Notes: generated from the letters alone by a model not told the origin. A stretch of 64,000 nt of DNA from Chlorokybus atmophyticus (GCA_009103225.1 RHPI01000560.1:788524-852523), one strand, 5' to 3'. Numbered from the stretch's first letter, positions 1 to 60,291 are shown. A program made the numbers and translations.

Positions 1-3000
1 TTCAAGTTAGAAGAAGCTGAGGCAGAGAACGAGCTCGATCAAATGGATCTTGCAGCAAGTGTCAACCGAAGGGTGCTGAAGCATCTGTGGATCCAACAGA
101 CGACGTGAACAAAAAGTTCTTCGAATGGCCGCGAGGTAGCTTATGGCATACCACATCAATGCCAAGGGCTTGACAAGTCTAATACTCTTGTTTTGCTTTG
201 CAGACCTGCCCGATAACAGCGCGTCACCCAGCAAGGGCAAGGCAACCAAGCCTTCCACGTCCACATTAGAAGATTCAGATAACTCCGATAGTGACAAACC
301 TATAGGCTACTCACCTGTCATTGAGATCAGTAACAAAAGTGAGCTATTGTATTCGGCTTTGGCCTGCTTGTCATTACTCTGTGTGCATTGGCTCAAGGCA
401 TAACCACTAAGTGCGTTGCCATAGGATATTCGATAGTCGCTTGCTTGTCTTATGTTTCAGGCCTGTTGAATCGGTTGAAGCTGCCCCCTTTGTTTCAAAC
501 CTCTGGAGGAAACACCTTGTTCAATGTTCCCATTGATCGGACGATGCTTGCTCGCCCGGGCCATTCCCTGAGACCGGTGAACGATGCTGGGCTGAAGCTT
601 GTGGAGGGCGAGATCGACGCTGGCCTGCCAAATTACAAACGGTGGATTTAATTGGTGCTCGAAAAGATTGGACCCACAGAATGGCGTCAAGTGCTAGCAG
701 ACGAGTTTTTGCTGGACACGTCGAGCGAAAGATGGCAGTTCAAGAATCTGTGCGGGAATCACTCGCTGACTATATCAGCGCAGGCATTATGACCATCCAG
801 ATGATCCAAAATGGGCGTCTTAAAGGATCGAGGTAGGCTGCTTTGTTGTTGTTAAGTTCTGATACCTTCAATAACTGACCAACAACATTATATGTGACAA
901 GTCGTGACCAACATCGATAGACTTCAAATCCTCAACCTGAGTAGGCTGCACAACTTGCAGCATGAGCTGTGACAAAAGTCCACGCCATTTGGGGTTATGC
1001 ACGCCATGCGTGACATCTAAAAACAGCATGGTCAACCGTTTAGGCTGTCCATTGGGCAGACCCGCAAGACAAGGTGGGCTGAAGCGTGGCTTGACTGCTC
1101 ACGGTCATGGATGGTCATCTTGCGAGAGTCCCTGACGCCTTCAACGGATGACGAGGTGGCTAAAGTCCCCCAAACCAAGCGCGTCCATGTCACGTACGGC
1201 TTTAAAATCGTATCTATATACAATGCACAACATCCGATACAGCTTTCTACATCTCCGTTAATTACATTGCTACTGCAGGATTTGCGATGGATCTCGGTCT
1301 CTCATAGCCAGATTATCAGCGCTTTTTCCATGTGCTGCACAGCAAAGAAGACTTGTTTATGGCCGATGGAAAGCCGAACACAGCGCAGGGCATTTCCCTA
1401 AATCTCTTGGACAACTTTACTAAACTCGAGCCCCCCCAAATCATGAGCGTTGTCAATCATCTAGACTCCGGCCGGCTGTCCGTTTCGAGAAACAAAGAGT
1501 TTGTCATTGTCTGCAACAACATGCGCAAAAGAGGCAGATTCAATGGATTTATCACTGCCAAGGCTTTGAATGAAGACTTTGGCAAGCCTGGGTACGTTCA
1601 ACCTGATCTGCTTGCAGCGTTCCAAGTTCTTAAACCTTTCTTAACACCCATCTCTTGGAGGGTCAAGATTTTGAACCTTTCTTAGCTGCCTGCCATTTGT
1701 CTGAACGCAATTGTTATGCTTGCAGCAATAAGGATCGTCTTTGCTCAAAATACTCTGAGCTTTTTAGAAAGCTGGATTTGCTCTTCTCCAGAGCTCAGAT
1801 GCATGGCTTTTTCATGAGAGAGCTGATAGCAACGAGACCCAAGGTACAGACGAAAGAGTCAGAAAAAGACGTTGAGAAAAAGCCAATAAAGGCGGGCAAG
1901 GTGAAAGGGAAAGGCCAGCCCACAGATGTCCAACAACTTGAAGATTGAGATCTTCCCGTCGCTATACGGGATGATCTTAAAGAACTCACGGGCTCCAAGC
2001 TGGTCTACACAGCCCAAATTAATGGCGCTGTGGAATTTACGCAGTAAGCAATGTCAAGATTACTGTGGCTGGTTCATTGGCGGAGCGTTTATGCCACTGA
2101 CTATGCTATGTTGCATGTAGACGCAAGATGTGGAGTTGGAAGAGAAAGCGCCTGCCAGTGGTCAGGCAACGTGTCGTCCTTTGAATAGATTCTGCTCAGT
2201 AGTAGTTCTTGGACGGCTTGTTCAAGTCGGAGGAACCCCTGCCGTCATTCTACAATGTGTTCGTGGATATTGAGTTTGTTAAGCATCGCAGTAGCGTTGA
2301 GGATATTGGCATCAACGATGAGTGCTTCAAAGACTTGAGGATATCCTGGTCGGCCACAACAAGCCGTTGCCTTTTTGGAATATGGTGGTCCTCGTGGATG
2401 ACGACCATCTTAGCAGCGTAGTGCAGATTTTTAGACAGGATGCCTCTAATGTGGAGACATTTACTTACCACCACGCCAGCAGCAGTAAGTCGTTGTGTTC
2501 CAGGATATGCAAGGTCCATTAACCCGATGTAGCAACTGAGGCTACTGTGTTGTCTTCCGCAGAGCAATTGGCTTTTCCCACGTACTTTGCATCTCGGCAA
2601 GCAGCAATCATGGTAGTTGCCGGCTTCAAGGACGATGATAATGATGTTGGTTTGCACTACGCAAACCTTGAGCGCTTTGATCAGAGTGTGGACCCGGATG
2701 AGCGGTGTTGGTAGCCGGCAGATTCACGCTTTGCCACAAGCAAGTTCCTTCCCAGCTATCACGATGATCAACCTACTATTCCGCAACTGAGAGAACACCT
2801 TGCCTCTCATCCAAATCCCAAGAGCAGGGTTGATGCCAGGATGGAGCTGATCAAGGTTGATGAGGGTCGGGATCCGCTAGAGATTCTGCTCGACGCTAGG
2901 GCAGTAGCTGACCGCAAAAATGCTTTGCTCAGTGACATAATGCGGAGTTATTGGACAGCTCATATAGCGAAGTTTGGAAGTAAGGTGGTCAACCAAGCTT

Positions 3001-4456
3001 AGCGATTCTCCCGAAGGCTTGCTCTTCACTTTTTGCCTTATCGCAAGGACACCAAGGAGATGTTCTTTTTGGACCTTGGTGGTGGTGCTGCGGGCTTTGC
3101 AACATATGCCCTAGAGCGAGGGTACAGCGGATTCCTTGTAGACCCTGATCCCACTTGCATCCACGCTTTGAGTGTGTACTGCGGAAAGTTTAGCAAAGCC
3201 TACGAGGAACTGGTAAGCAGAGTGTGCACTTTGAGTTACTAGACCTCTCAATCTCAGCTCCCTGGCTGACCACTTTGCTTGCGTAGGAGAAGCACAACTA
3301 TGGCTTGGATAGCGAGTACATGGCACTTACAGGAGAACCCGCAGCGACGCCTGTGCCGCTTTCGCGAGTCAAAATGCATGCGGCCATTGCCAAAGAGATT
3401 GTGCGTGAAATGTTCACAGGGTTCAATCACAACTCCGCTCGGCACCTTGCGATGCTGGGTCAGTGGCTGACCAAGGACAATGCTGCGCAAGAAGCTGGGG
3501 GTGACGACAAGTTCAAGAAAGTAAAGCAGTGGGTGTCTAAATCAATGGGCAATGTTGTGACAAGTAAGCGCCTTATGTTGTGACATGTGTGAGCGTTGCC
3601 GAGGATCAATTTCGGGAGGTATCATAATCCGCATGTCTGTTTGCAGCGAATGGCTACGCAGAGGCGCTAGAAGAAATGGCATGATCAGAAGTGGCAGGAG
3701 CCGCACGACGAGCTGCAGAAGGCAGATCCCCCAGCTGACGCTGCATCTATGGACTTAGATGCTGATGCTGCTGTAGTGCCTCCTGCTAATGAGCACAAGG
3801 ACGAAGGCGACAGCAACAGGAGAGTTCAGATGCAGAGCAGGACACTAGAGGCCAAGCAAGTTGAGGAGGCTTTGCGGCATCGGCTGGCGGATTGAATGGA
3901 TAAGTTCATGGACCTCAACTATCTGAGCGGCGATGAAGGCGAGCCCTCGCCTTATGAAGCGAAGCCCATTAGCAGCAGCGGCAACGTTGTGAACCTAACA
4001 GCCAACAGCCCCAAGGAGGCTAATGTCCTTTGAAAGAAAAAAAGAGAAAAAGAACGAGTCAGATGTGGCCTCAGGGAGCCGCTCGCAGTTTGTAAAAGGC
4101 TGTTCTGTCCCTGATTGTGATATCACTGTTGGCTTCGACAGCATGTACCCCACCAAGTGCGGCGCAGCTGGGCGTGTGCTGGGTGTGTCAAGCAGTTGCA
4201 CGACTTGTGCATTACACGCTTCACAGGAAAGGAAGAGGTCCAGCAGACCCTATGCACCGACCACCACCCTGACGTGTCTGATGACTGGGAGCAGGCCATA
4301 GTAGACCAAGGCAAGATAACCCAGGCACGCACCATCCAAGGCTGCAGTGTCTGTCGAGATGTTGAAGGCTACAAGCAGTGCTGGCCTCAGGAGTCACAGC
4401 AGGAGTCTCAGGTGCCGAGCCTTCCAGACTTGGATGTGGTTCGGTCTGCAAGCTAA
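1..4456 (+). pseudogene. Decayed multi-exon gene: ParB-like domain + beta-class (N6A/N4C) DNA methyltransferase-like domain + C-terminal PHD finger; 5' end outside window
   Basis: GT-AG introns (e.g. ~138-202). In-frame FKNLCGNHS (~745-772, ParB-like GNH motif). Motif IV-like VFVDIEF (~2257-2277) precedes motif I-like FLDLGGGAAGFATYALERGYSGFLVDPD (~3064-3150), the beta-class order. PHD core CAGCVKQLHDLC...LCTDH (~4175-4262). Several stops and frameshifts. TGTAA at 4664. Confidence 0.42.
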
Positions 4457-4989
4457 CTCTCCATCCCAAGTGCAAGCCAAGTCTCCGGCAATGCCTCGCC
4501 GCTTTGAAGGCTTATGATAATAGAGTTCTACTACTTGCTGCTGTTAGCATGTCCAATAACTGTTGCTCTCAGCAATAATCTTGTACTGTAGAACATAGTT
4601 GGCTTGTTTGTGACGTTGTGTATGTTGTATCGGTTGCCCTTGTGTGTATAGAACTTACTCCTATGTAAAAAGATCTTTAGAGGTGTTGGGGCGTGCTTCT
4701 TATGCATGACAAGCATATTGCCATAGCTTAGCAAGTTTAAGATGCTCTAAGTTTGCCTTCAACTAGTTGAGAAATAACACGCTCAGATGTGTTGTTTAAG
4801 TCATTAATAGCGTATCATATCGTGCATAAACGCAAACTCTGCCTCAACTGCAAGTAGCTTGCACATAGTGTCAACTATATAGTATATAACAATATAGTAT
4901 ATCTTGAAAATGACAAATTGCAGTTGATTACATTGAAAATTAACATAACGTTGCACAAAAAGTGTCCCCCCGGATCTTGCTACACGCCT

Positions 4990-7900
4990 ACAGTTCCTGC
5001 GTCGAGAGGTGCAACGGCTAAGCACAGAGCTAGACACGGTCTCGGCTGAAAAGAAGCATGTGGTGCAGCAGATGACGGAACAACGACGGGCTGAACGATC
5101 ACAACCATCCCCCGATTGCCCTGCTGGAGATGATGCCTCCCGGGTGCAGCAGGAGGCTTGGCATTGGCATGCACAGTGGGCGGTAAGTATGTGGGGTGTT
5201 GGCTGCAGCATGTACGCTGGATGCGCTCAAGGCACATGCGCTGACGTGTGGCACGTTGTGCGTGTGTTGTCAATGGTACTTGGCTGGTTAATGTGTGTGA
5301 GCTGAAGTATGTTGTCAATAAATAGGAAGCCAAGGCAATGCAGCTGCGCCAGGAGACTGTGGCGGCTGCTGAGCGCAGTGAATTTGCTAGCTCAGAGGAG
5401 AGGAGATGCAGGAGGAGATGGACAGCGTGCAGCAGCATGAAACGGTGGGTAAGGCCTACCCACTGCATGTCGTAACCTGAGAAAGAGTCAAGGCAGGTGA
5501 TTGGATAGGTGAGTTGATTGACGCCATGGTTAGGTGCTAGAGGCAAGGGTGCAAGAGGAACGTGAGCAGGCTAGCTGTGAAAGGCAAGCGCGGCGCTCGA
5601 TTGAATATGAACGAGATGGTTACCGGTGTAGCCTGGTGGAGCTGATCGATGTTGTGGCAGGCCTACGCGAGACATTGCGTAACGGCAGGCACTCGCAGCA
5701 ACCACTTTGGGACGCCGTGGTTGCAGAGGAGGTTCCACTCATGTATGAGGATGATGTGCGCGCTGCGGCGGAAGAGGAAATGGCTGATGACATCGCATGC
5801 GATGTGAGGGCAGTGGATGCGCAACTACTGTAGAGGGATGCAGTGGTGTTGCTGACGGCTGTTTCAGCACAGTTTAACATCATGCAAGCAAGGGTGCTAT
5901 TGCGCGCGGTGCAAGCGAGACTCCCAGGGGCTAGCGTAACAGTCACCGAGGCGCGGCAACACGGCACTCCGTCAATAGCAGCTTGGGGTTAACCCTGTGG
6001 CGTGTCTGCTGCGCCATGCCATCAAGGTAGCGGACGTGCCTGTAGCACGCATGCAAAAGCAACTGCAATGAGTGAGGACAACGCTGATGGCGTGGACATC
6101 AAGTTTCTACGCAATCTGCAACAAGCTAATGGAAGCTGAGCGTCAACGCATGGTGGAGCGCAACAAAGTTGATCATAATCTCCGTTTCGTCGACTGGGAG
6201 ATGGAGTGGGAGAAATCGGGGGCTGCATTGCAAAAGGTGTTTGGTCCAATGACTGGCTTTAACGCTCTGGAGCTAGTAAAGACTGCTGGTCCACGACATG
6301 AACGCAACTTGGTGGTATTGCGCAACAAGACATTATACCTGATGCATCCCGCGGTTTACGCAAGGAGTAAGTGGGCAATGTCGCCTGTACACACGATTGT
6401 GACTGACTCGATGGATGAACTGAGTACTGGAAACAAGCTGCTGAAGACCGTGAATCGCGTCGGAGTAACAGCAAGTCGCAGCCATGTTGAAGGTATTCCT
6501 ACATCCGGTCAGCTTGCCCTCTGCATAGGAATACACTAACCCTAACCCTTACCCTAACCCTAACCCCAACAAGAGAAGCAAGGAGCGCGTGGGAGTTCAC
6601 TATGCGTGATTGACAAAGGAGCAAGTGGTGAAGGCCAAGCTGCCCGCGTGGGAGTGTTGAAGGTATTCCTACATCCGGTCAGCTTGCCCTCTGCATAGGA
6701 ATACACGAGAGAATCTCAATGACTCCGGACTGAGTTTGAGCAGACTGCAGAGCAAGGCCTTACAAGAACCGTTGGATCTTGGTGGATACGGAGCCGAATG
6801 ACACGTGGAGTAGCTTGTTGGATAGATCTTAAAGTTAGCTACGTGGTGCAGCTTACAGCAGGATTCGGTTGAGTAGATCGTACGGTGTAGCTTGTAGACC
6901 AGCAATGTGTGTATCTGGTGCAGAATCTGGCGGGTATAAGACCCGCGGACTTGTTGCCTTAAGAAAAGCTTTAGTGTTGTGATGTAGCATGTCACCCATG
7001 CGCATGTGCTTGTCAACGTATGTATGTCAACAAGCCATATGGACCGCCACATGCACCGGCGTGCAAGCCACAATCTTGTCTCCATGGCTCGGTTGCAACC
7101 GCCAGAACGGCATGTGTTGACAACTTGGATATCCGTGCGGGGCATGAGGCAAAGTACAAGGGTAGGACTACTGGAGACATGTATGCCACCTCGACTCAGG
7201 TCACCTCCACTGCGGGGCGTGAAGTGTCTACTGCACTTGAACTGAAGGTGAGTGATGGTGTGCTGGCACCCTATCATGCTATGTTTGTGTTGTTCAGCTT
7301 GAAGCCGTAATGTTGATGAGGTACTGTTGTTAATGCAGCGATCACGCAACCGCACGCTATTAGAGGCACAGATACCTGAGACCGCACTTAAGGCCATGCC
7401 GCCACTGCTGCTCACACCAAGGCCGCAAGTCAATGTCCGCAGCGACCCCATGCGGAATCTCCAACCTGCAGAGACACACGCCTTGGAAGCATTTTGCATT
7501 GCACTGCACAATACAGTGGTGTATCGGATGCGGCAACATCATCAAGACTTCTTGCTGCCTATGAAGGATGACTGGGCAAGGTACATGCAACAGGCGAGTG
7601 AAGACACAACGCCTGTGGTGAATGACATCGAGTATCTGCCGGTGCTGCCATTTTGCTCGGACAAAATTGATAATCTTAAGATTGCACTCCTGCAACTGCA
7701 CAACAAGGTGGTGTTGAACGATGCACAGAGCAAGATATGTGTCACAGGCAATTAGAAGACGTTTGCCCATATAGTTGCCTTCAAAAAGGCTGAGCCAGGA
7801 TTCTGGGACTGGGTGGTGCCTATACCTGGCGACTTTCATGTGCTCATGAACATGCAACCGGTGTTGATGAAAATCTACTTGGACGCTGGCATGGATGCAA

Positions 7901-9955
7901 TGGCAGTGGAGGCCGGGTTCTTAGCCTCTACCTTCCGCAATCACCTCATAAATGGATCGCTGAAAACGCATCCACAACTTCCTGTGCAAAATTTGGGAGG
8001 CGTTGTACATGCATATGCATGACATCTGATGGAGGCAGGAAGATGCAAGCATTAAGGAACAGTGCGAACAGGACCTGCGCTTGCATGGGATCAATGCCAG
8101 CAAAACATGCAAGTTCGTTGAACTGTTCTATGAGAAGAAGGCCTGTGAGGATGCAACTTGGCAGTTATGGTGGAGCTTTGTTAACAGAGATATTTTGAAC
8201 TACTTCGGTCTGTTCTGCTCGGTTCGGCAGATCTGGCACCTTAGATTGGCGACTTTACAGGGTCTGAGCCCTTTGGCTTTCGCCTGGGATTGCTACAATT
8301 ACCAACGAGTGATGACGCTGCATGTGGCGGACCTCCAAATCATTCCCCAAACGCTTCTTGACGTGCTAGCTGATGGAGGGTTCGCTATCAGCATGACTGG
8401 TACACTAGGGAGGCTGGTGGCACTTGATGAGGCACACGAGTGTCAGATCAACCGTGACATGAGGATGTCACTGTGCAATCTAACAACACAACAGCTGCGG
8501 CAAAAATCACATCACCTTGGTGAACGGAGTCAGACCCAGAAGAATGTGGGTCGTCAACTACTGCTGGACATTGCACCATGCAATGGTGACATGGACGCTG
8601 ATGCCGATGACGACCACAGCAGGGTGGTGCGCAACATTTGTGTCGACGCATCACGCTGTGGTAGTGACATTAGACACATGCAGGAGGTCTTAACAGCATC
8701 ACTTACCTGGCATGGTTGCAACTCACCTCAGACTGGACCAGGAAATGGTGCTGGCGGGCGGTTCTGACATGGATGAGACAGGCCACTGTGCGCGTGTTGT
8801 AGCGCGAAGCTGCAACAACGATGACTTAGTGATGTATGTTGGAGACTACACCTGCAACCACGGTGAAGCGGATTCAAGCGTGTGGGTACCTGCGCAATAT
8901 ACCCCTTACAACAAGGTCATGATATACTCACCGGACACGGATGTAACCATGATAGGCCTTTTAGTCAGCGAGACATTGAATATGAGCTTCAAGGATGTAA
9001 CACTGCAGTTGGCACAGCATTTGCGCGCTGGTGCACGCCCGCCCTTCATCAGCTTGACGGCTTTTTACACGCATGTGCGGAGCATGCACCAGGTGAACAG
9101 CATCAATGAACGTCAGCGGGGCTGGCTGATGCTGTTAGTCTATGCAGCCACGGGCTACAACTATACATCTTTCATTGGTGGTATATCAAGCAATTTATGT
9201 GGCGCAGTGTGCTGTCACAGCATGCTGCTTTCATTACAAAAGATGTGAGACAAGAAGAACACGAGATGTGCTTCTTTGTGCGCCAGATCGGGTGTGCTTA
9301 CTGCAAGAAGTACCGTTCTTCATTTGATAGTGGCATTCCAGCATCACTGTTCTTTGAACTCTATGGCCCTGCAGCAACCGCAAGTGACAAAGTTTATCTA
9401 GCCGAGTGGCTGGAGGCAATACACAAGAATGTTTGGAAGAAAACGGCAACACCTCGGGACACTATACCGACAGTTGACGCGTTGTGGTTGCATGCACTAT
9501 GTGCCATTTACGCGGTCAATATGTGGATGCAAAGCTGCAGTTACGACATGCACCTCCCAGACCTCGCAGACTATGGCTACCAGGAGCATGATGGAGTGCG
9601 ATATGCAGTGCAAGATCTGCCAGAGAACATGGCGGCTGCGATTGGCAGAAGACAGTTGCTCATGCACGGGTGCAGTTGCAAGTCGGGCAGGTGCAACACT
9701 AGAAGATGCAAGTGCAAGAAAGCTGGCAGGCAATGCACAAGAAGTTGCTCGTGTCTCGGATGCGAAAACCATGGAGAGGAAGCTGCACATGCAGCATGCA
9801 CTTCAACACAACCAAACACTGATCAAGTAGAACCACATCCACGCAATGGCACAGAAGCAACTAGTGTAGGCAAAGAAGAATGGGCGTTCTCAAAAACAAA
9901 CGATTCTGATAGTGACGTCGAGGATCTATCCAAAATGGACATGGATGACATCTAA
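4990..9955 (+). mobile_element. AcademX-like DNA transposon gene (DDE transposase + XPG/PIN-like nuclease + Cys8/CXC finger), pseudogenised
   Basis: Ordered motifs: LLKTVNRVGVTAS (~6440-6480), VDNLD (7116-7130), TGN*K (=GDQ, 7744-7758), PGDFH (7825-7839), ALDEAHECQIN (~8420-8452), HGEADS (8859-8876), SPDTDV (~8928-8945), ATGYNYTSF (H3TH-like), IPTVDALWLH, CSCKSGRCNTRRCKCKKAGRQCTRSCSCLGCEN (~9670-9768). No TIRs found. Confidence 0.75.
6485..6706. repeat. 52-bp perfect direct repeat flanking a 118-bp insert that begins with (CCCTAA)n-like repeats
   Basis: 6485-6536 = 6655-6706 exactly. Insert 6537-6654 starts TAACCCTAACCCTTACCCTAACCCTAACCCCAAC. Confidence 0.9.
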
Positions 9956-10266
9956 GCCATGCAAGGCACTGACCCTATCTGCAAACTCTTGACCATCCCG
10001 ATGATAGCAGCACTCTTCTAGTGCTGCGCTTGCCACGCCGACTCCCACCATACCAGCATAAATTGGTGCAACTGGCCCCATCTCTCAAGCAAGAGCAATG
10101 GGTCCACCACTACCGCCCGCTGCCGCCACCGCCGCCGCTCTTTGCTCCACAGCGTTGTGACACCAAATAGTATCCCACCACCGGCTGACGCCATTTTTAG
10201 GGTTCAGCGCACGAAATTAGGGTTGTGCAGCCATCAGGATTGTAGTGATCAGAGCGCATCAATAGT

Positions 10267-12120
10267 GTGGTAGGGCAGTTCTTTGTCGTAGAGTATATGT
10301 TGTCACCTCCTTGTGGCAAAAAGGCTTTGGTCTGCTCCGTGTGTCATGCCTACATTGTGACAAATGGCCAGCGTGCACGCCTGGATGGACATGAAGGTGA
10401 ATGCATGCGTTACGGCGCATTGTACGGATTCATTGCTGCATGCTGGCACCATCACGTCGGTGGTCTCCACATCATTGAATGCGGATCCAAACACAAGTGC
10501 ACTGTCCCTAAGTTCTTTCACTAGCAATTCACCTGCATTGAATGCGAATGCACACCATTCGCATTCAATGCAGCAATGAATTCGAGTGGCATGGTAGGCC
10601 CATGTGGTACATGCCGTATGCTCACCCCGGTACTATCCGCACTGGTCAAGTGGGGACAGCCACGCATGTGAGTAAGCGTGCTCTGTTGAGTAATGCTCGT
10701 TGATTTTAGACATGCACCACCCTCACACAGCTCTATACAACTGATGGACTGTGAACAGCCACAACGCGCACGTTGCGGTCGCGGTGACGCTGCGCGGCAA
10801 TACATGGCCGCGACCATGCAAGAGCTCAACACCGAACATCAGGTGCATTAGTGTCAATAGAGTAACGTCATAGCAATGCCTTCTGGTAGGTACAACTTGT
10901 GCAATTGTGCTACAATTTACCATTCCGTGTCGTGTGCAGACTGCTACCAGCATTCATGTCTCCGTTGATGCTGTGCGCCCGCTCTGCTTAGAGGGCAGTC
11001 CGGCATTTGTAGGCTGCCCATGCATGGTGTACTGGCCACTTGACCAAGCATGGTATGGGGGATCATTCTACGCCTACAACGACAGACCTGGTACATGTCC
11101 ACAATGTACGGTTTCCTTACAGGGTATTTGCGTTCACTAGTTCCGAATAATGCACTCTTGCACTCTTCTTATAGGCAGGCACAGTATTCGCTTCGAAGGC
11201 GGTGAAGTGCAGCATATGGTTATCAAAAAGCACAACGTAGTGTTGGTTGTGGCGATTGATTGCGGACGCAACATGTGCATACGCGTGGGTGGCAGCAGAG
11301 TGCAGACCAATGGCAAGGTGCCTTCTCCTTTGCCAACAATCCCTTTATAGAGGCAGTTCTCTCCACTGCTTGTAACACACTGCACCCAGTCGCATAACGG
11401 GGCACCACATCGTCCTAAAGTGCTGGACTTGTGCTGTGGTGGTGGCGGAGCCAGCATGGGACTGTATCGTGCAGGCTTTGACGTCACTGGAGTTGATGTT
11501 CTGGAGCAGCCAGAATACTTTTTTCAATTCATTCGGGGCGATGCAATGCTGGTGAACCTTGCACCCTATGATTTCATATGGGCAAGCCCCCCATGCCAGG
11601 CCTTTGCACGCTGCATACCTGACTCTCAGCGTTTTCAACACTCGAGCACATGGAACCACAGCACCCTGCTGCACCAATTGCGAACAAGACTGCAGGAGAG
11701 CGGGAAGCATTCGTCATTGAGAACATACGTGATGCGGCCCGCCACTTGAACCCAAACAGGGTCTTATGCGCCACCATGTTTGGTCTGGCCACATTCAGAC
11801 ATAGAGTGTTTAAGACGTCTCCTCATCTGCCGGTTGAATTGCACTGCGACCACCATCAAAAGCAACTGGGTGCGTTGTCGGGACACTTCGCAAGAACAAC
11901 ACTAGTTTAGACAAGACGCACATGCAGCAGATGTATCCCGTTTATGGGCAAGCAAAAAGCCGTTGTTGGGTTAGTGGGTGGAGCATAGCTTTGGGCATTA
12001 TTTGGATTGACGAGTGTACACTGGTGGAGTGCATCCCACCTGCATTCAGAGTATATAGGAAGGCAGATGCTGCTAGCAATGGGCTACACACTTAGCGGTC
12101 CCCCCCTGTCATGGTCTTGA
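10267..12120 (+). pseudogene. PHD-like + Tudor + bacteriophage/bacterial-type C5 cytosine DNA methyltransferase fusion gene, intron-containing, frameshifted
   Basis: Splicing intron 11091-11174 (84 nt) rebuilds the Tudor domain FVGCPCMVYWPLDQAWYGGSFYAYNDRPGRHSIRFEGGEVQHMVIKKHNV. Same frame continues to VLDLCCGGGGASMG (11420), WASPPCQ (~11580-11599), FVIENI after a 1-nt loss (~11708), LCATMFGLATFRHRVF, then ECIPPAF..EYIGRQML (~12027-12070). TGTAA at 12123. Confidence 0.8.
10533..10573. repeat. Perfect 18-bp inverted repeat with 5-nt loop
   Basis: CTGCATTGAATGCGAATG-CACAC-CATTCGCATTCAATGCAG. Confidence 0.95.
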
Positions 12121-13010
12121 CATGTAAGTCGCTAGTGCCAACTCGCGCTCCAGGCTGTACTGTTGGTCATTGCTGGTGCATTCTGACAAGGCACTGTAAC
12201 AGCCATCACACGGGGTTACACACAGTCACACACAAGCTCTCACAAGCAAACACACGGTACAGACGGTACTGCACATGCAGCTGGTCACCATCAAGTGCCA
12301 AGTCGCGACCACATGTGCACCTCAGTCCACTGAATGGACATTAACCTGTATACAATACACGTGACATTTGCCTTCCCCACAGCTTGTCATTCACATCAAC
12401 GGATTAAGGTTACTATTCGCAATGCAACATCGTGCCGTGCAACTTGAGTCTCCATCTATTGGTGCACTTGAGAGAGGTTACATGCACTCGTTTCGGAACA
12501 TCTGAGCTGGTAAGTGCACACACTGCCTGCCCATACATGACACCACAATAGCATAACGAATAAATAACACAATGTGATGAGGATTGACCAGTCAGATTGA
12601 CAAACACGCATGTCAACCACAACTACAATACACCACGACTACAAACTACAGCATCGCATTTGCCTTTATTGCCAGCGTCCATGAAGTACACAGGCTTGTT
12701 GCACCATTCCCGCACACCACAAAATGCGCCCAGCTTTACCAGGCAGGTGGACTGGTTTCATGACAATGTCCCATCATGGAACACTGCGCATGGCAAACTT
12801 AGGATGGGACATAATGCAATCTTACGACAAAACCTGATTCACCTGCAATGCATGGTTGCCACCCCTCACATCGTTGCTGGAGGGATCTGCGGCACTACAG
12901 CACAGTGCACAACTCAATAACCAATGCCGATCCAAGAACATAACAACCACAACAATCATGCAGTTAACCGCATGTTCAGTGCCACCATTGTCAACAACCA
13001 ATGCCACTGT

Positions 13011-13094
13011 TGTAACGGAGTGCTATCGCGATGCGGTTCCCCGCCCTTATTTAATTAGAAATAAGGGTCTCAACGGGATAAACACAGCCATTAA
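13011..13094 (+). repeat. 5' LTR remnant of Gypsy A (first 84 bp only)
   Basis: About 90% identical to 17286-17369, then joins directly to gag sequence. Confidence 0.88.
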
Positions 13095-16000
13095 TGCAGT
13101 ACAACACGTCGGGGCAACCATTAGTTCCCGCGGACCCCGCAACTTTGCAAAGGTTGAGTGTGTGTCTGTTCAATGACGATGCTGCGGCTGTGCAGGACAA
13201 GTCACAGGTGGTGGCTTCAGTCAAGCCACATGGGGGAGGGGGGAAGCGGTTCCCTCCACCAAGTGCGCATGCAGCGAAAAAGGCCAAAACCTCATACGCT
13301 CCTGCGAGTGGTGCTATTGCAGCACGCGCCTGCTACGTGTGCCATCAGCCAGGTCACATTGCAAAGAACTGCCCAATCAAGGGAAAGGGCAAGGCCAAGA
13401 AGGTTGAATAGGATTACGTCGTGACTGATGTACCTTCATCTAGTGAACAGTTGCTAGTGTTACATGCAGCAAATTGGTTTGATGAATTGTCTCGTGTACA
13501 TGTAATGACACATGCATGGCAAGCACATGATAAGCTGCCACTTTTTGATAGTAAAAAAGTGGATCACCAGGCTTGTGTGCTAGTGCATGTAAAATTTAAC
13601 ATGCTAACATACGTTTTGCGCACATTATGTGAGTTATAAAATCAACACACGACATTGAGTGTGGTTGTCATGGTGCCGACGTATCATGGACCGTGGCTAA
13701 AGCATACTCGGGGGGGAACTGTGTTGAAACAATTCACAGAGCGTGAGACGGGGACAGTGCGGTTGTCAGCAATATTGATTAACCCGTGCATCAGTGACGG
13801 AATCTTTGCTACCTTTAGAGGGCGAGTAGTACCGTTATTGTGGACCTTCACATGCACGGCACAGAGTATTACTAGCTCGTTCTTGGTTGACACCGGGGCA
13901 ACGCATAACTTCGTCGAAGAAAAATGGGTTATGCGCAATAAAATAGCGTGTAAACCCTCAGCATTCTCAGCTGCTTGTGTTGGGGGTACGTTATCGGTAA
14001 AAGGTGAAATCAAGTGAAAAGTTAAGATTGGTAGTTATCAAGCCAATTTTACTTTCATTGTAGTGCCCATTGACATAGTTGGTGTTGATGTGGTATTTGG
14101 CCAAGAATGGCAGAATCAAGTGTCTATGACATTAGATACTGCTGCACGGCTGTGCACATTAGAGAAGGGGCGTAAGCGCATCACTTTGTCCGTGCAGGGG
14201 TCGAATAGCTTGGAATACAAGCAAACAAACCCTACGTTTCTTACGGCGCTTCAAGTAAAGCGTGCGTTGCGTAAAAACACACCTGCTTTTTCAATGCACT
14301 TAACGTCGAGTGATGATGTAGTGCCTGGCAATACAAAAGGTGTCGCGGACATCATTAAGAAATTTCAGGATGTGTTCTCAGATGAGTTGCTGAGCTTGCC
14401 CCCTGATCGAGGTGTCGGACACACAATACCTTTAATTCCTGATGGTAAGCCTCCATTTCGGTCTATATATAGGTTGAGCCCTCGTGTGAGGGGGGGAATG
14501 AAAACACAGATAAAAGAGTTATTGGAAAAGGGATTGATTGAGCCAAGTTTTTCACCCTTTGGCACCCATATAAAGAATGGGAAGTTGCGCATATGTGTGG
14601 ATTACCGTGTTCTAAACAAGATCACATTAAAGAACAGATACCCGTTGCCAAGGATTGATGATGTGTTTGACAAGTTGTCAGGGAATGCGTACTTTAGTAC
14701 GCTAAACTGAACAAGCGGCTATCATCAAATCCGGATTCATCCTTCGGATGTCTATAAGACAGCATTTAGGACACCTACGGGCCATTACCAATACAAAGTG
14801 TTACCTTTGGATTGACTAATGCACCTGCTATGTTTCAGACAGAAGTGAATAAAAATTTCAGTGACATGCTTGGTCAACATGTCATGATATACTTGGATGA
14901 CATCATTGTCTTTAGTAAAACAAAGGAAGACCATAGGCAATACTTGGAAGCGGTGTTTGCTAGATTGCGCAAGCATCGTTTGTTGGCAAATCTCACTAAG
15001 TGTGATTTTTGTAAAACGGAGTTGCCCTTTCTTAGTTACATTGTGAGTGGTGCAGGTATCAAACCTGACCCTCGCAAAGTGCAGATTGTAAAAGAGTGGC
15101 CCCGACCTCAGAATATCTATCAATTAAGGTCGTTTTTAGGGTTGGCAAACTATTTTCGCAACTTTATGATGGGGTACTCGACAGTTGTCATGCATTTGAC
15201 CAAACGGTTGCGTAAAAATGCCCCGTTCACTTGGACAACAGCACAAGAAGCTGCAAAAGGTGAAGTTGGCTTGAACATCGGCGTCGGTGTTAACACTGCC
15301 CAATTGGGACAAACACTTCACAGTGGTCAGTGACGCATCAACACTTGAGTGTGGTGCGCTACTATTGCAAGATGGTAGACCTTGTGCTTATGAGAGTAGG
15401 AAGTTTATTCCTGCAGAGGTGAACTACACTACGACAGAGCAAGAACTATTGGGTATAGTTCATGCTCTCGAGACATGGAAATGTTACTTAGAGGGTGTTC
15501 AGTTTACTGTTGTGACTGACCACAACCCGTTAGTGTATTTCTCAACACAACAAAACTTGTCGATACGGCAAGCGCGCTGGAATGAGTTTTTGTCCAGGTT
15601 CACCTTTGATTGGGTGTGTCGGCCGGGCAGAACCAATGTGGCTGACCCTTTGAGTCGCTGCCCGTCATTACGGGCAGTAATGCGCGCGCAATTACTCGCG
15701 CGCATTACCACGCAGCAAATTGTCTCCCAATGATGAGTTTGTACAAACTGTTGTACAGGGGTACACTTTGTACCCGTGGGTTTCTAATGTAGACAACTTA
15801 CAAAAGTTTGACAAACGTCACAATCTGTATTACATGAACAACTATTTGGCGATCCCTGATCATGCTAAACTGCGTGTAAAATGCAGAGTGGATGTACACG
15901 ATCCACCTTGCGCTGGGCACTTTGGTAGTCGCAAGACCACTAAGGCAGCGCAACAGTTGTATTGGTGGCCATTGTTGCCTGCTGATGTGTAGCGGTATGT

Positions 16001-17285
16001 GGACACGTGTGAGAAATGTGAACGTGACAAACCGTTACGTCAAAAGCCCGCTGGGCTACTGCGGCATTTACCAATTCCTGACAGTAAGTGGGAAGGTGTG
16101 AGTATGGACCTTATCACTGAGCTCCCTGAGACAGCGTTGGGTCATACTGCGGTTGCAGTGTTTGTGGATCGTTTGACCAGAGTGGTTCACATTGTTCCTT
16201 GCTGTACGGAGATAGGCTCCCGTGATCTAGCGATGATCCTTTGTCGCGTCAGTGTTCAAGTTGCATGGCTTGCCTCGCAACATTGTCTCAGACTGTGACT
16301 CAAGGTTTGTGGCTCAGTTTTGAAAGTCGTTATGCAACTTCCTGCAAATACAGCAACACATGAGTACCGCTTATCATCCGTAGACTGATGGTCAGACTGA
16401 ACGAGCCAATCAAGTGATTAAGGAAACCATTCGGCATTATGTGAGTCCGACTCAGTCGGATTGGGATATTTATCTTCCAATGGCTGAGTTCGCGATTAAT
16501 AATGCATGGCAAGAGAGAGTGCAGGAAACTTCGTTCTTCTTAAATTACGGAGTGCATCCACAAAGTCCTGCGGGCATTAAGTTGCCAGCTAACGACTTGA
16601 CTCGCGTGCCTGCAGCGCGCGAGATAGCTGCGGCCATGCAAGACAGGTTAGCATTGGCAAAGAGCTGTCTGCGCGCAGAGCAAGACCGACAGAAAGCCCA
16701 AGTTGATAAGCATCATAGGCAGGCCGACTATGATGTGGGCACTTCGGTGCTTTTGAGCACTGAAAACATATCCATTAAGGGAGTGGGTACCCGAAAATTG
16801 TTCCCTCGCCGGATAGGCCCCTTCAAAGTGGTTGATCGGGTCGGCACTCACGCATATCGCTTGGAGTTACCACATTCTATATGTATACATAATGTGTTTC
16901 ATGTGAGTGTACTGAAACCGTTCAAACGGTCGGGTTCAACCTCCTCCACCCCCAGTCGTAGTGGATGGCGATGATACTTTCCAGTATGAGGTGGGAACGA
17001 TCATGAGTCACTGTAAGCCCCGACGCGGACGCGCGCCGACTTACTTGGTGAAATGGAAAGGGTATGGTGTTGAATACAACACGCGGGAACCCGAAAGGAA
17101 TCTTACCAACTGCCAGGAGATTTTTCGGGCGTACTGGAGTGATGTGTCCGCACGCGAACGGTAAAAGGGTGCTGGCAGACATCTTTACCGCTTCGGCCCT
17201 TGTTCTTTTCTCACTCAGGTTTTCTGTGCTCACGGTGGGGCCTTGCTAACCCTTCAATGAGGACATTGAAACCTAAGTGGGGGGG

Positions 17286-17611
17286 CCTAACAGAGTGCTA
17301 TCGCTATGCGGTTCCTCGCCCTTATTTAATTGTATATAAGGGTCTCAACGGGATAAACACAGCCATTAAAGTCGTAATAGGGCCTTTATAGGCCCTAATA
17401 AGTTGTTATATTATTAAACACCGATATCAACTTGAGACTCAAATCTTTAATTAATATCGGCCGCATGGCGGCGCTGCTAACGCAGCGACCGCCATGACTA
17501 GGGGATATTTCAATCCCCTGGTTGCCAGCGGCGGCGGCAGCGACGTGGCTGTGGTTGGTGGTGTTGGGGTAGGGGATTAAAGGGGGGGGCAGTAGCACTC
17601 CCCCCCTTACA
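17286..17611 (+). repeat. 3' LTR of Gypsy A (326 bp)
   Basis: Follows the PPT, matches the 5' remnant, and ends TTACA directly before TSD ACTGT. Confidence 0.88.
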
Positions 17612-17798: not shown

Positions 17799-19654
17799 CC
17801 ACTTAATGTCATGCCACTGCTCAACGCAATGCCGTCGTCTACCCGGATCCATATCACAAGACGTGCGAAGCACCCTGCGCGCGAGCACCACGCCATGCAC
17901 CACATGCTCCACCACCAGCAACTTACTACTCATACGCTGTGGGAAGCCCGAGAGCGCCCTATTAGCACGATGCAGATTAAATCTAAACCCAAAACCCCCC
18001 GCCACATCTACATGCAGTTCCCTAACACCCTATTCCAATCCCGTAACAGAGGCAGCTATGTGCACAGGCCACCCGAGTAACACCAACCCAATGTTGTACA
18101 GAAAATCAGTATTCAATCACTATTCAACAATTAGGCCAACAAAGTGCACCACTATACCACCAAAGCAACATGCATCACACACACACTCACCTGATTATAT
18201 GCCGATTGATTAAATGACTGACTGCGCCTGATGAATGGCAAAACGCCGCAAGGCGAGAATGTGACGCCGTGGACGCCACCTACGCCAGCACCACTCTGAA
18301 CCGCCATGTAACATCCTCAATACAGCCAGCCACAGGAACTTAGCCCACGGCCGCCAATGCTCACCGCCCCGCCCACGCCAACAACAACAACAACTGCGAG
18401 CGGGAAACACCGTGATGAAAAGCGCTGATTAACGGCGACGGCAGAACAGTCTACTAACTACATCAGCCGCCGTGTACAACCTACTGTACAAACGAACATA
18501 ACACACAACACAGCACTGGTTAAACCTGGATTCAACAGCGCATGACAGCCATATATCGACAGAAGCAAGCACACCGTTGACAAAGATCCATCAGACTGCA
18601 ACGCCGCGTACCATCGTCACAAAGCATTTATCACAACCACATGTGCGTCTTTCGACCAGAGTGCAGCGGCTCAATAGCGTGTTGAATGCTGCAGCATGAC
18701 GGTCATTCCACCACACCCAGCGCTGTACACCTCTGACCTGACTAGCACAAGCTTTGCCTGAAGACCATTAGCGTCCCGACGGACTACGCATAGTGTAGCC
18801 CGCCACGGTTGGGTAGCTGCTGTGGCCCACAGCTTGTGGGTCTTACAAGGCAGCCATTTCAAGGCAGGGTGGAGGGTGTTCGATTCGCATTCAACACTTG
18901 GAAATCAAAACGAAGGTACGCTTCCGGCCGCGTGAAGCATTGGGTGTAAATTCGCCGCCACAGTTACTGTGGGTCTTACCACGCAGCCATCTCTTAAGTG
19001 TTTGATAGGCAATCAGCACCTGAAAATGGCCGCACCTTTGGTCTTTGGCGGCCTACCACAGGCAGTCGGATGCTGTCCATCGGTCAAAATGCACGGGATG
19101 ATGATGTGAAGTTTATAATCACTCCCCCCCGCCAGCCAATGACTGCAACTTGCAGCCTGCAAGTTGCAACACGAGTCGTACACTGTGGACGGCCCACGAC
19201 GGTCCAGATCGCCTGCCGCCCCCCTAACTACAGTAAGTACTACTTACTAAGTAGTACTACGTTGTACTACACGTGTAACATAGTACATTGTGCTAGTACC
19301 TAGTATAGTACGATGTGCTAGTTAGTAGTATACAGCCTACTCGGGCTATAAGTATCGTCTTTGTCAGTATAAATGCCCTATAAACATAAAATGTTAGGGA
19401 ACCAATGGTTAACCTAATAAGGTTTAAATTAGATAAGTCGGGACGAATTTCGAGGAAATAAGAGTCGGGATAAATTAAAATGTGGGAAACATACATGGTC
19501 GGGACGGAAGTTTGAGCGTGTAGCCAACACCGACCATGTATGGTCGGTGCAAATTTCTTGGGATTTTACAAGTCTTTGTGCTCGCGGCGTAATGGTGCTG
19601 TGCGTTTAACCAACATTATGTCGGCCGACGTAACACCTTATCTACTAGACCTTA

Positions 19655-36385: not shown

Positions 36386-36583
<198 letters not shown>

Positions 36584-60270: not shown

Positions 60271-60291
60271 GCGAGAGCGAGAGCGCGAGAG

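What the first reader, a model, noticed from the sequence alone, without database searches (positions are those of the whole stretch)
1..12120. Candidate giant Academ-type DNA transposon carrying two different reader-fused DNA methyltransferases
Seen: three co-oriented, similarly decayed genes with short introns lie head-to-tail: [ParB-like + amino-MTase-like + PHD], [Academ transposase-XPG-CXC], [PHD-like + Tudor + C5 MTase]. Their intron style differs from the long GT-repeat introns of the host genes after 28 kb. Inference: they may be one large mobile unit bringing its own epigenetic toolkit (adenine/N4C-type plus 5mC writers, each with chromatin readers), possibly for self-regulation or host-silencing evasion. 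I know of no description of Academ elements with MTase cargo. Element ends were not found, so co-mobility is unproven.
Basis: inference. Interest (0 to 1): 0.85.

Follow-up and report, generated by a model that had tools for sequence, protein, structure and literature searches.

The report
Dead transposon relics with methyltransferase genes
Three broken genes lying in a row in an alga-like genome are most likely the remains of two different jumping genes, one of which (an Academ-type transposon) seems to have carried its own DNA-methylating enzyme. This copy is dead and no element ends can be recognised, so it cannot show that the genes ever moved together.

Summary
Three co-oriented gene relics do lie at 1-12.1 kb. 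The middle one is an Academ-type transposase: a DDE core, an XPG/FEN-like nuclease part and a CXC finger. It is dead: the first catalytic D is N, and it has in-frame stops, frameshifts, about 250 residues missing and a repeat insertion. The third gene joins a Cys/His region and a Tudor-like motif to a complete-length phage-type mini C5 DNA methyltransferase, which is also broken. In the first gene only a generic SAM-binding motif could be verified. Its ParB, amino-methyltransferase and PHD calls found no tool support, and no catalytic (D/N/S)PP(Y/F/W) motif exists.

A single giant unit is not supported. No TIR/TSD pair encloses the genes. About 80 related Academ loci elsewhere lack both neighbours within 10 kb, and full-length families sampled there measure 6.2-6.9 kb (CAGTC...GACTG termini; 4-bp TSDs in 4 of 6 copies). 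Dinucleotide composition groups the transposase, gene 3 and the tail (4.9-13.0 kb) against gene 1.

My best reading is two adjacent dead elements: Academ plus Tudor-C5-MTase, and a separate upstream relic.

The scan has already noted Academ and Plavaka elements with this Tudor-MTase gene, and Sola2 elements with gene-1-like cargo, on other DNA of this genome. I could not check those notes. This locus adds a worn copy, plus a spliced antisense RNA over the transposase.

The parts
343..4578 (+). Gene 1 relic: a multi-exon pseudogene. Generic SAM-binding motif I (FFLDLGGGAAGFA) at 3063-3101, then an acidic LVDPD. Apparent in-frame stops at 2712-2714 and 3000-3002. Cys-rich C-terminal pieces at 3999-4453 lie in two frames.
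   Evidence: ORF map. Pfam Methyltransf_23 E 0.007 only. PDB best hit is a UbiE-like MTase, E 0.1. No ParB, N6_N4_Mtase or PHD hit. No homologues found. No (D/N/S)PP(Y/F/W) motif. Faint DUF488-N3i (E 0.13) at 537-833.
4581..4948 (.). AT-rich spacer (35.6% GC) between gene 1 and the transposase gene. It is the likeliest place for an element boundary, but none is recognisable.
   Evidence: No significant inverted repeat with the right side.
4949..6536 (+). N-terminal part of the transposase gene. Coiled-coil-like ORFs at 4949-5302 and 5534-5830. ORF 6072-6536 is homologous to the region upstream of the DDE core in Academ relatives.
   Evidence: tblastn of 6072-6536 hits 1.1-1.5 kb upstream of the DDE match in L004, L006, L007, L008, L026 and L035.
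6537..7001 (.). Foreign DNA inside the transposase gene: (CCCTAA)5 at 6537-6566, then a high-copy repeat from about 6617 to 7001. It is flanked by or includes an exact 52-nt direct repeat (6485-6536 / 6655-6706).
   Evidence: Summed contig depth is 38-229 per bin at 6600-7001 (300-560 at single sites) with many variants, against about 3 elsewhere in runs X1 and X4.
7282..8584 (+). DDE transposase core, dead. GD.KT reads GN* (N at 7750-7752, stop at 7753-7755). GDFH is kept (D at 7831-7833). DEAHE is kept (8426-8440). Frameshift near 7964-7989 and stop at 8027-8029.
   Evidence: tblastn alignments to P0016 and P0030. 493 relatives at E<=0.001 in the representative library, best 40% identity. 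Relatives carry PF20231 DUF6589.
8745..9245 (+). XPG/FEN-like 5'-nuclease part (HGEAD, SPDTDV at about 8928-8945, a degenerate SGCDY). About 250 residues that all relatives have between DEAHE and SPDTDV are missing just upstream. Frameshift near 9167-9194.
   Evidence: Alignments A1 and A3. Profile against PDB: EXO1, E 0.049. The AF2 model of a relative has pLDDT 90.5. Its best folds are XRN1 (Z 7.5), Rat1 (5.6), EXO1 (5.0), a flap endonuclease (4.1) and XPG (3.9). Motif spacing is 166 aa against a median of 418.
9665..9772 (+). CXC (tesmin/TSO1-like) cysteine finger at the transposase C-terminus. Stop codon at 9953-9955.
   Evidence: Pfam TCR E 1.7e-4. The same hit occurs in relative P0044. 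Aligned to P0016 and P0030.
8076..10138 (-). Spliced, alternatively spliced, non-coding antisense transcript over the transposase relic. Its 5' end is near 10138, in the spacer between the transposase and gene 3.
   Evidence: read laying joints in X2 and X3 all have CT..AC ends, which is GT..AG on the minus strand, and the exons are 99-100% identical to the window. There is no long ORF, and the splice sites were checked.
10297..10521 (+). Gene 3, first coding piece: a Cys/His-rich region starting at ATG 10297. Its zinc-finger type is unclassified.
   Evidence: No Pfam family at E<=0.1.
11006..11248 (+). Gene 3, Tudor-like motif (VGCPCMVYWPLDQAWYGGSFYAYNDRPG / RHSIRFEGGEVQHMVIKKHNVV). It is split by an inferred 84-nt GT..AG intron at 11091-11174, which removes the in-frame TAG at 11138-11140.
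   Evidence: Read directly from the sequence. The spliced peptide has no reference, so no profile or fold test was possible. There is no RNA cover here.
11411..12060 (+). Gene 3, mini C5 DNA methyltransferase domain. It is complete in length, with motif I DLCCGGGG, IV SPPCQ, VI FVIENI, VIII FRHRVF and a C-terminal ECIPPAF. It is spread over three frames, with frameshifts at about 11705-11709 and between 11886 and 11958. It is preceded by an in-frame TAG at 11348-11350.
   Evidence: 415 proteins, best E 9e-25, PF00145. (three pieces colinear with residues ~2-107, ~96-160 and ~141-210 of ~215-aa MTases). The nearest relative examined, P0155, sits on tailed-phage-like contigs. Weaker relatives lie on giant-virus MAG contigs.
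12061..13012 (.). Non-coding tail with the same TG/CA-rich composition as the transposase and gene 3. It ends where a Gypsy-type retroelement begins.
   Evidence: The retroelement at 13013-17376 has RVT_1, RT_RNaseH and an integrase SH3 and direct repeats at 13013-13101 / 17288-17376.

Best explanation
The 12-kb stretch is not one giant transposon. It is the worn remains of at least two elements lying side by side in a transposon island.

Element A runs from about 4.6-4.9 kb to 12.1-13.0 kb. It is a dead copy of an AcademX-type cut-and-paste transposon. In this genome's lineage the element acquired an accessory gene directly downstream of the transposase. That gene joins a Cys/His region and a Tudor-like histone-mark reader to a small phage/virus-type C5 DNA methyltransferase.

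In intact copies the transposase (DDE core plus XPG-like nuclease) would excise and insert the element with 3-4-bp target duplications. This part is inferred, not shown. The accessory protein would deposit 5mC on chromatin that its reader recognises. That might set the methylation state of the element itself, for example to couple transposition to replication or to imitate host gene-body methylation.

Here nothing works. The transposase has lost its first catalytic aspartate. It also has stops, frameshifts, a deletion of about 250 residues and an inserted repeat. The methyltransferase has two frameshifts and a nonsense codon. Only a spliced antisense non-coding RNA is seen over the locus.

Gene 1 (0.3-4.6 kb) is a separate relic. 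It has a generic SAM-binding motif and unknown substrate. According to unchecked notes of this scan, genes of its kind belong to Sola2-type transposons, whose transposase would lie upstream of the window.
For: - Domain identity of the transposase and the C5-MTase.
- Decay.
- Composition: the TG+CA dinucleotide fraction is 0.192 (transposase), 0.203 (gene 3) and 0.230 (tail). These three are not distinguishable from each other. Gene 1 is 0.163 (p 2e-4 against either gene) and the flanking retroelement is 0.165 (p 2e-6 against the tail).
- Gene 3's ATG is 345 nt after the transposase stop, on the same strand.
- Typical relatives are 6.2-6.9-kb elements with CAGTC...GACTG termini and 4-bp TSDs, and with no homologue of gene 1 or gene 3 within 10 kb. 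This was checked on 80 loci totalling 976 kb. An Academ that also held a 4.5-kb gene 1 would therefore be exceptional.
- AcademX elements make 3-4-bp TSDs (PMC10045372).
- Leads from the scan's notes, not verified: Academ elements of about 10 kb with this MTase between their ends (s1-192529, s1-177141), and gene-1-like genes inside Sola2 elements (s1-180902, s1-190508, s1-186271).
Against: - No TIRs or TSDs were found for either proposed element, so no boundary is demonstrated.
- The CAGTC terminal motif of the distant relatives does not occur anywhere in 1-5939.
- A compositional difference can also exist between genes of one element.
- The relatives examined are only 27-41% identical in the transposase and mostly come from one assembly, so they say little about this lineage.
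- No other copy from this genome could be read. In two low-coverage runs (X1 unlabelled, X4 probably DNA) only contigs identical to the window lie on 7.2-12.1 kb. No diverged copy at 85% identity or more was seen.
- The Tudor call and all mechanistic steps are inference.
Confidence: 0.5

Rival explanations
1. The Tudor-C5-methyltransferase gene is not cargo of this Academ copy. It would be an independently dispersed multi-copy gene: a remnant of another element such as a Plavaka, a unit with its own mobility, or a host gene family that accumulates in transposon islands. On this reading it lies next to the Academ relic through nested insertions and deletions.
For: - No ends enclose the pair.
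- None of 80 Academ relatives has such a neighbour.
- The scan's notes report the same gene beside unrelated Plavaka/CACTA transposases as well, so adjacency to any one transposase is not specific.
- The region is a dense TE island, with Gypsy-type elements at 13.0-17.4, 19.6-23.1 and 23.1-25.5 kb.
Against: - The spacing is tight (345 nt), the orientation is shared, and the dinucleotide composition of transposase, gene 3 and tail is indistinguishable.
- Notes report the pairing between element ends on other DNA (unverified).
Confidence: 0.27
2. One reading: one giant Academ-derived transposon of 12 kb or more, carrying gene 1 and gene 3 as two accessory methyltransferase genes.
For: The three relics are co-oriented, closely spaced (about 370 and 345 nt) and all decayed.
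Against: - The composition breaks between gene 1 and the rest.
- No enclosing TIR/TSD pair was found.
- Relatives are 6.2-6.9 kb and lack both neighbours.
- Gene 1 shows no DNA-methyltransferase signature.
- The scan's notes place gene-1-like genes in Sola2 elements, and describe Academ-plus-MTase elements of about 10 kb. That is too small to hold a 4.5-kb gene 1 as well (unverified).
Confidence: 0.08
3. The stretch is a fragment of an endogenised large DNA virus or virus-like element, which often carry several methyltransferases and transposases, rather than of cellular transposons.
For: The C5-MTase belongs to a small phage/virus-type family. The nearest relative examined lies on phage-like contigs, and weaker relatives lie on giant-virus MAG contigs.
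Against: - No viral hallmark gene lies in 1-13 kb.
- The transposase family forms ordinary multi-copy TIR/TSD elements in eukaryote-like contigs.
- Gene 3 has a eukaryotic-style intron and a Tudor-like fusion that none of the 120 stand-alone relatives has.
Confidence: 0.05

Closest known systems
AcademX DNA transposons (Academ superfamily; described in Repbase Reports 2010 and by Kojima, Mob DNA 2020, as cited in PMC10045372 and PMC10799480)
   Same: A DDE transposase is followed by an XPG/FEN-like nuclease part. Relatives fetched here form TIR elements with 4-bp TSDs, which matches the 3-4 bp stated for AcademX (PMC10045372).
   Different: This copy is dead and has no recognisable ends. A Tudor-like/C5-methyltransferase gene follows the transposase, which none of the 80 relatives examined has. 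I found no paper describing such cargo for Academ. I could not compare directly with Repbase Academ consensus sequences.
DNMT-carrying retrotransposons (SymbioLINE-Dnmt, SymbioDIRS-Dnmt3, KnitGypsy-Dnmt3; de Mendoza et al. 2018, PMC5890265)
   Same: A mobile element carries a C5 DNA methyltransferase, possibly to methylate its own DNA. A Gypsy-linked PF00145 piece of that kind also lies in this window at 23309-23947.
   Different: In those elements the DNMT is a eukaryotic Dnmt3-type (or other) domain inside a retroelement polyprotein. Here it is a separate, intron-containing gene with a phage-type mini MTase and a Tudor-like reader, next to a cut-and-paste transposase. tblastx finds no similarity between the two MTases in this window.
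Plavaka accessory genes of red algae (PAG2: N6-adenine DNA methylase PF01555 + SET; PAG3: ParB-like + 2OG oxygenase; bioRxiv 10.1101/2025.02.11.637652)
   Same: Giant DNA transposons carry chromatin- or DNA-modifying accessory genes that move between transposon superfamilies.
   Different: Gene 1 gave no PF01555, SET, ParB or 2OG signal here. The host transposase is Academ rather than Plavaka, and the verified enzyme is a C5 methyltransferase, not an N6 one.
Fungal DNA transposons encoding TET/JBP dioxygenases (KDZ/Plavaka and others; PMC12730594)
   Same: Cut-and-paste transposons with an accessory enzyme acting on cytosine methylation. The accessory gene is shared among heterogeneous transposon lineages.
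   Different: Those elements carry an eraser/oxidiser of 5mC. This one carries a writer fused to a reader.
Stand-alone ~215-aa C5 DNA methyltransferases of phages and metagenomes (PF00145; e.g. P0151-P0270)
   Same: 50-62% identity and colinear over the whole domain, with motifs I, IV, VI and VIII and a C-terminal ECIPPAF.
   Different: None of the 120 relatives listed has the Cys/His or Tudor-like N-terminal extension. The window copy has an intron upstream of the MTase domain and is frameshifted.

Membership tests
AcademX transposon | DDE transposase core of the Academ type | tested here: met
   7282-8584 is colinear with 493 relatives (best E 2.5e-27). The GD.KT / GDFH / DEAHE motifs are conserved in the family, and relatives hit PF20231 DUF6589. 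That this family equals Repbase 'Academ' rests on its architecture and on my own knowledge. No Repbase sequence was available.
AcademX transposon | XPG-type nuclease domain C-terminal to the transposase core | tested here: met
   Invariant acidic motifs (HEEGD, SPDTDV, SGCDY). Profile against PDB: EXO1, E 0.049. The confident model of a relative (pLDDT 90.5) matches XRN1 at Z 7.5 (202 residues aligned, rmsd 5.2), EXO1 at Z 5.0, a flap endonuclease at 4.1 and XPG at 3.9. Foldseek alone was not significant. The strength is moderate, and the fold is a 5'-nuclease, not specifically XPG.
AcademX transposon | Terminal inverted repeats with a 3-4-bp target-site duplication | tested here: not met
   For the window copy, no TIR+TSD pair rises above chance and no CAGTC...GACTG pair exists. 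For relatives the feature is met: 4-bp TSDs in 4 of 6 copies checked.
C5 DNA methyltransferase (PF00145) | Motifs I (FxGxG), IV (PCQ), VI (ENV), VIII (RxR) and X, in order | tested here: met
   DLCCGGGG, SPPCQ, FVIENI, FRHRVF and ECIPPAF are colinear with about 215-aa PF00145 proteins. The Pfam hit on the first piece alone is weak (E 0.0015).
C5 DNA methyltransferase (PF00145) | Open reading frame able to make the enzyme | tested here: not met
   The domain lies in three frames (two frameshifts), with TAG at 11348-11350 upstream.
Tudor / Agenet-type reader | Recognisable Tudor barrel by profile or fold | tested here: inconclusive
   Only a motif-level match after removing an inferred 84-nt intron. 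The two exon pieces gave no relevant Pfam hit (none at E<=0.1; one unrelated hit at E 0.19). The spliced peptide has no reference, so it was neither searched nor folded.
Beta-class amino (N6A/N4C) DNA methyltransferase (PF01555) | Catalytic (D/N/S)PP(Y/F/W) motif and a profile match | tested here: not met
   No such motif in any plus frame of 1-4600. No PF01555 or PHROG methylase hit. Only generic SAM motif I (Methyltransf_23 E 0.007; PDB UbiE-like E 0.1). The copy is decayed, so loss of the motif cannot be excluded.
ParB/Srx-fold DNA-binding domain | Profile or fold match | tested here: inconclusive
   No Pfam, PDB or Atlas hit for 343-648. Faint DUF488-N3i at E 0.13 for 537-833.
PHD finger | Cys4-His-Cys3 signature with a profile match | tested here: inconclusive
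   Cys-rich pieces at 3999-4453 and 10297-10521 gave no PHD hit. The best hits were zf_RING-like at E 0.14 and LUC7 at E 0.17.
Single composite transposon holding all three genes | One pair of termini with a TSD enclosing all three genes, recurring in other copies | tested here: not met
   No enclosing termini. Recurrence within this genome could not be tested: no other copy could be fetched, and the runs were low-coverage. Relatives in other assemblies lack both neighbours.
Sola2 transposon (as home of gene 1) | Sola2 transposase and termini next to gene 1 | not testable with these tools
   The expected position lies upstream of the window start. The idea comes only from unchecked notes of the scan.

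The most novel reading that the evidence does not exclude
In this alga, cut-and-paste transposons of unrelated superfamilies (Academ here; Plavaka/CACTA according to the scan's notes) share a mobile reader-writer cassette: a Tudor-like histone-mark reader fused to a phage-type mini C5 DNA methyltransferase. Intact elements would use it to write 5mC on their own chromatin. That could time transposition to replication through hemimethylated ends, or disguise the element as a methylated gene body. This locus would be one fossil of that system. Its inter-genic promoter region still fires an antisense, spliced RNA across the transposase.
Probability: 0.3. Interest if true: 0.7.

Novelty: new variant of a known kind. 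Interest (0 to 1): 0.35.

Why it matters
Transposons that bring their own DNA-methylation writer turn the usual picture around, in which the host methylates and the transposon is silenced. This has been shown for retrotransposons (PMC5890265). Accessory chromatin genes are known for red-algal Plavaka elements and for fungal TET-carrying transposons. A cut-and-paste Academ element with a reader-fused C5 methyltransferase would extend this to another superfamily and another enzyme architecture.

This particular copy cannot carry that argument. It is dead, single-copy at the DNA level, has no recognisable ends, and its supposed second methyltransferase could not be verified. Its value is as one more data point for a genome-wide census, and as a caution against reading adjacent relics in a transposon island as one giant element.

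Tried and rejected
- **TIR/TSD searches.** I used seed-based inverted repeats. I ran an exhaustive scan for 24-nt arms with a 3-4-bp TSD, left ends 5-7300 against right ends 9950-30000. I ran gapped local alignment of both candidate left regions against the right regions, including beyond the retroelement, with shuffles as a null. I also searched for the CAGTC...GACTG termini learnt from relatives. All results were at chance level. The best pair, 4602-4622 / 12217-12237 (18 of 21), is GT-rich, internal and has no TSD.
- **Paralogues inside the window.** tblastx and blastn of 1-12.6 kb against the rest found none.
- **Other copies through public reads.** The listed runs hold only 7-14% of the sampled words. 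Over 7.2-12.6 kb only contigs identical to the window were laid, so no family boundaries could be read.
- **Gene 1 identity.** Pfam at E<=1, PHROGs, PDB sequence searches, two Atlas searches and two homologue searches gave nothing beyond a SAM motif. One Atlas search returned HEAT-like helical features of low recognition, which I do not trust.
- **Element-specific palindromes.** The scan's notes report these for other elements. None is enriched here.
- **RNA genes.** No Rfam family and no tRNA in 1-20 kb.
- **Minus-strand ORF 6669-7511 (280 aa).** The translation looks like junk.
- **Not done.** Spliced peptides have no reference, and the tools take no read-through here. The Kojima 2020 Academ paper is not held in the library. 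One look-up of encoding contigs look-up of a transposase relative (P0016) showed no neighbour of interest.

Full report
**What is there.** The plus strand of 1-12.1 kb holds three runs of exon-like open frames. The sequence is eukaryotic. Public contigs from two runs that are probably RNA show GT..AG splicing at this locus. The surroundings are a transposon island. It holds a Gypsy-type retroelement at 13.0-17.4 kb, gag and chromo pieces at 20.4-22.1 kb, and a Gypsy-linked PF00145 methyltransferase piece at 23.3-23.9 kb. The last of these recalls KnitGypsy-Dnmt3 of Klebsormidium nitens (PMC5890265); I did not test that identity.

**The middle gene is an Academ-type transposase, and it is dead.**
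- The 245-residue piece 8030-8764 finds 493 relatives in the representative library. The best has E 2.5e-27 and 40% identity.
- Full-length relatives of about 1,250 residues align colinearly to 7282-9946 and carry Pfam DUF6589.
- The family's three acidic motifs are GD.KT, GDFH and DEAHE. In the window the first reads GN followed by a stop codon (7750-7755). The other two are kept.
- There is a frameshift near 7964-7989 with no residues skipped, so it is not an intron. There is a stop at 8027-8029 and a further frameshift near 9167-9194.
- Between DEAHE and SPDTDV the window has 166 residues. Twenty of 21 relatives have 380-434, with a median of 418, so about 250 residues are deleted.
- ORF 6072-6536 is homologous to the region upstream of the DDE core in relatives.
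- That ORF is followed by foreign DNA: (CCCTAA)5 at 6537-6566, then a repeat running to about 7001. On that repeat the two low-coverage runs (X1 unlabelled, X4 probably DNA) pile up to summed contig depths of 38-229 per bin, against about 3 elsewhere, with many variants.
- The C-terminal CXC finger hits Pfam TCR at E 1.7e-4.

**The XPG-like part.**
- An alignment of ten family members shows invariant acidic motifs.
- Its profile finds human EXO1 in the PDB at E 0.049, through the SGCDY region.
- A 26-sequence alignment gave a confident model of a relative (pLDDT 90.5).
- Foldseek was not significant.
- The exhaustive structural comparison ranks XRN1 first (Z 7.5, 202 residues, rmsd 5.2). Other XRN1/Rat1 chains follow, then EXO1 (5.0), a flap endonuclease (4.1) and human XPG (3.9).
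- All of these belong to the 5'-nuclease (FEN/XPG/XRN) fold. The scores are moderate, so I call this part XPG/FEN-like rather than XPG.

**The third gene.**
- Piece 11351-11746 finds 415 small stand-alone PF00145 proteins, with best E 9e-25 and 50-62% identity.
- Three window pieces in three frames align colinearly to residues ~2-107, ~96-160 and ~141-210 of these ~215-residue enzymes. The domain is therefore complete in length but broken by two frameshifts, at about 11705-11709 and between 11886 and 11958.
- Motifs I, IV, VI and VIII and a C-terminal ECIPPAF can be read.
- The nearest relative I looked at (P0155, 62%) lies on tailed-phage-like contigs. Weaker relatives lie on giant-virus MAG contigs.
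- Upstream, removing an 84-nt GT..AG intron (11091-11174) joins two pieces into a Tudor-like pattern and removes an in-frame stop. This is my inference. No profile or fold test was possible, because the spliced peptide has no reference.
- A TAG at 11348-11350 could be avoided only by a 33-nt intron. The introns seen in RNA here are 71 nt or longer, so I read it as a nonsense mutation.
- None of the 120 stand-alone relatives has the N-terminal extension.

**The first gene.**
- Only a generic SAM-binding motif I is verifiable: Pfam Methyltransf_23 at E 0.007, and a UbiE-like PDB hit at E 0.1.
- Pfam at E<=1, PHROGs, the PDB, the Atlas and two homologue searches gave nothing for the proposed ParB, amino-methyltransferase or PHD parts. 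The only exception is a faint DUF488-N3i hit at E 0.13.
- No (D/N/S)PP(Y/F/W) motif exists in any plus frame.
- The long exon 2523-3239 has two in-frame stops.
- 'Two DNA methyltransferases' is therefore not established. One is a C5 enzyme relic and the other is a SAM-motif relic of unknown substrate.

**One unit or several.**
- No inverted repeat with a target duplication encloses the genes in any of four searches.
- I fetched about 80 loci with relatives of the transposase from metagenome-derived assemblies, 976 kb in total. None has a homologue of gene 1 or gene 3 within 10 kb.
- Multi-copy families among them are 6.2-6.9 kb with CAGTC...GACTG termini. Four of six copies checked have perfect 4-bp TSDs. 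This fits the 3-4 bp stated for AcademX (PMC10045372).
- These relatives are distant (27-41% identity), so they show what is ordinary for the family, not what this lineage did.
- Within the window, the TG+CA dinucleotide fraction is 0.192 in the transposase, 0.203 in gene 3 and 0.230 in the tail up to 13,012. It is 0.163 in gene 1 and 0.165 in the retroelement. Gene 1 differs from either gene at p about 2e-4, the tail differs from the retroelement at p 2e-6, and the transposase does not differ from gene 3 (p 0.34).
- This soft evidence groups 4.9-13.0 kb as one block and sets gene 1 apart.

**Reads.**
- The listed runs hold only 7-14% of the sampled words.
- In the low-coverage runs X1 (unlabelled) and X4 (probably DNA), only contigs identical to the window, at depth about 3, lie on 7.2-12.1 kb. 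No diverged copy at 85% identity or more was laid. This copy therefore has no close paralogue visible there, and the family's ends could not be read.
- The two runs that are probably RNA (X2, X3) show a transcript on the minus strand from about 10138 down to 8076. It has five introns, two of them with alternative sites, and all are GT..AG on the minus strand. The exons are 99-100% identical to the window (one mismatch in each of two exon pieces). There is no long ORF.
- No sense-strand RNA of the transposase or gene 3 was seen.
- The transcript's start lies in the 345-nt spacer upstream of gene 3.

**What the scan found before.** Notes on other DNA of this genome report three things. Academ elements of about 10 kb carry this methyltransferase between their ends (s1-192529, s1-177141). 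The same Tudor-methyltransferase gene lies beside Plavaka/CACTA transposases (s1-190510, s1-078762). Gene-1-like genes sit inside Sola2-type transposons, opposite their transposase (s1-180902, s1-190508, s1-186271). I could not read those loci, so they are leads only. They fit the two-element reading and shaped it.

**Literature.** I found the following:
- DNMTs in retrotransposons, and a remark that DNA transposons encoding a DNMT exist in marine viruses (PMC5890265).
- Red-algal Plavaka accessory genes with an N6-methylase/SET protein and a ParB-like/2OG protein (bioRxiv 10.1101/2025.02.11.637652).
- Fungal transposons with TET/JBP (PMC12730594).

I found no description of an Academ element with a C5 methyltransferase. 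The library is incomplete, and the main Academ paper is not held.

**Verdict.** The giant single-unit reading is not supported. An Academ relic with a Tudor-like/C5-methyltransferase accessory gene, lying next to an unrelated relic, is the best reading at about 0.5. The locus itself is ordinary debris. The family-level phenomenon is the interesting part, and it has already been seen by the scan in better copies.

Noticed in passing
window 8076-10138, minus strand: A spliced, alternatively spliced, non-coding antisense RNA runs over the dead transposase in two public runs that are probably RNA. Its introns, in plus-strand coordinates, are 8423-8515, 8656-8726, 8810-8931, 9061-9301 or 9061-9313, and 9368-9972 or 9368-10052. 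Its 5' end lies near 10138, in the spacer upstream of gene 3. It could be divergent transcription from the old accessory-gene promoter and might feed silencing.
   Followed up: partly
window 6485-7001: A (CCCTAA)5 telomere-like tract (6537-6566) lies inside the transposase gene. A high-copy repeat follows (about 6617-7001, summed contig depth 38-229 per bin against about 3 elsewhere). An exact 52-nt direct repeat (6485-6536 / 6655-6706) brackets the tract. The origin is unexplained: a telomere-bearing retroelement, break healing, or two partial repeat copies.
   Followed up: partly
window 23309-23947, minus strand: A PF00145 C5 methyltransferase piece (E 2.8e-8) lies in a Gypsy-type context, next to gag/chromo ORFs at 20.4-22.1 kb. 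It resembles KnitGypsy-Dnmt3 of Klebsormidium nitens (PMC5890265). tblastx finds no similarity to the gene 3 methyltransferase.
   Followed up: partly
window 13013-17376: A plus-strand Gypsy-type retroelement (RVT_1, RT_RNaseH, integrase SH3). Its only terminal direct repeats are very short, about 82-89 nt (13013-13101 / 17288-17376, 90-93% identical).
   Followed up: partly
window 19642-20332, 22497-23138, 56384-56873, 58810-59476: An interspersed repeat of about 0.7 kb in four copies: two direct copies 2.85 kb apart, and an inverted pair near 56.4-59.5 kb (91-97% identical).
   Followed up: no
window 36386-36581 and about 60270-60370: A poly-G run of 196 nt, and a (GA)47 array that ends at an N. 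These may be assembly problems.
   Followed up: no
window 10533-10573: A perfect 18-nt inverted repeat with a 5-nt loop, inside gene 3 between the Cys/His piece and the Tudor-like exon.
   Followed up: no
loci L003-L078 (assembly WLWD01 and others): One metagenome-derived assembly holds dozens of young Academ-type copies (94-99% identical within families) of 6.2-6.9 kb. They have CAGTC...GACTG termini and 4-bp TSDs (AAAA, TTTA, CTTT, AGCG). This is a good reference set for the family's ends.
   Followed up: partly
runs X2/X3, contig matching window 11564-11607: An expressed contig of 872 nt matches only the SPPCQ motif region of gene 3 (6 differences in 44 nt). This hints at a transcribed paralogous C5 methyltransferase elsewhere in the organism.
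   Followed up: no
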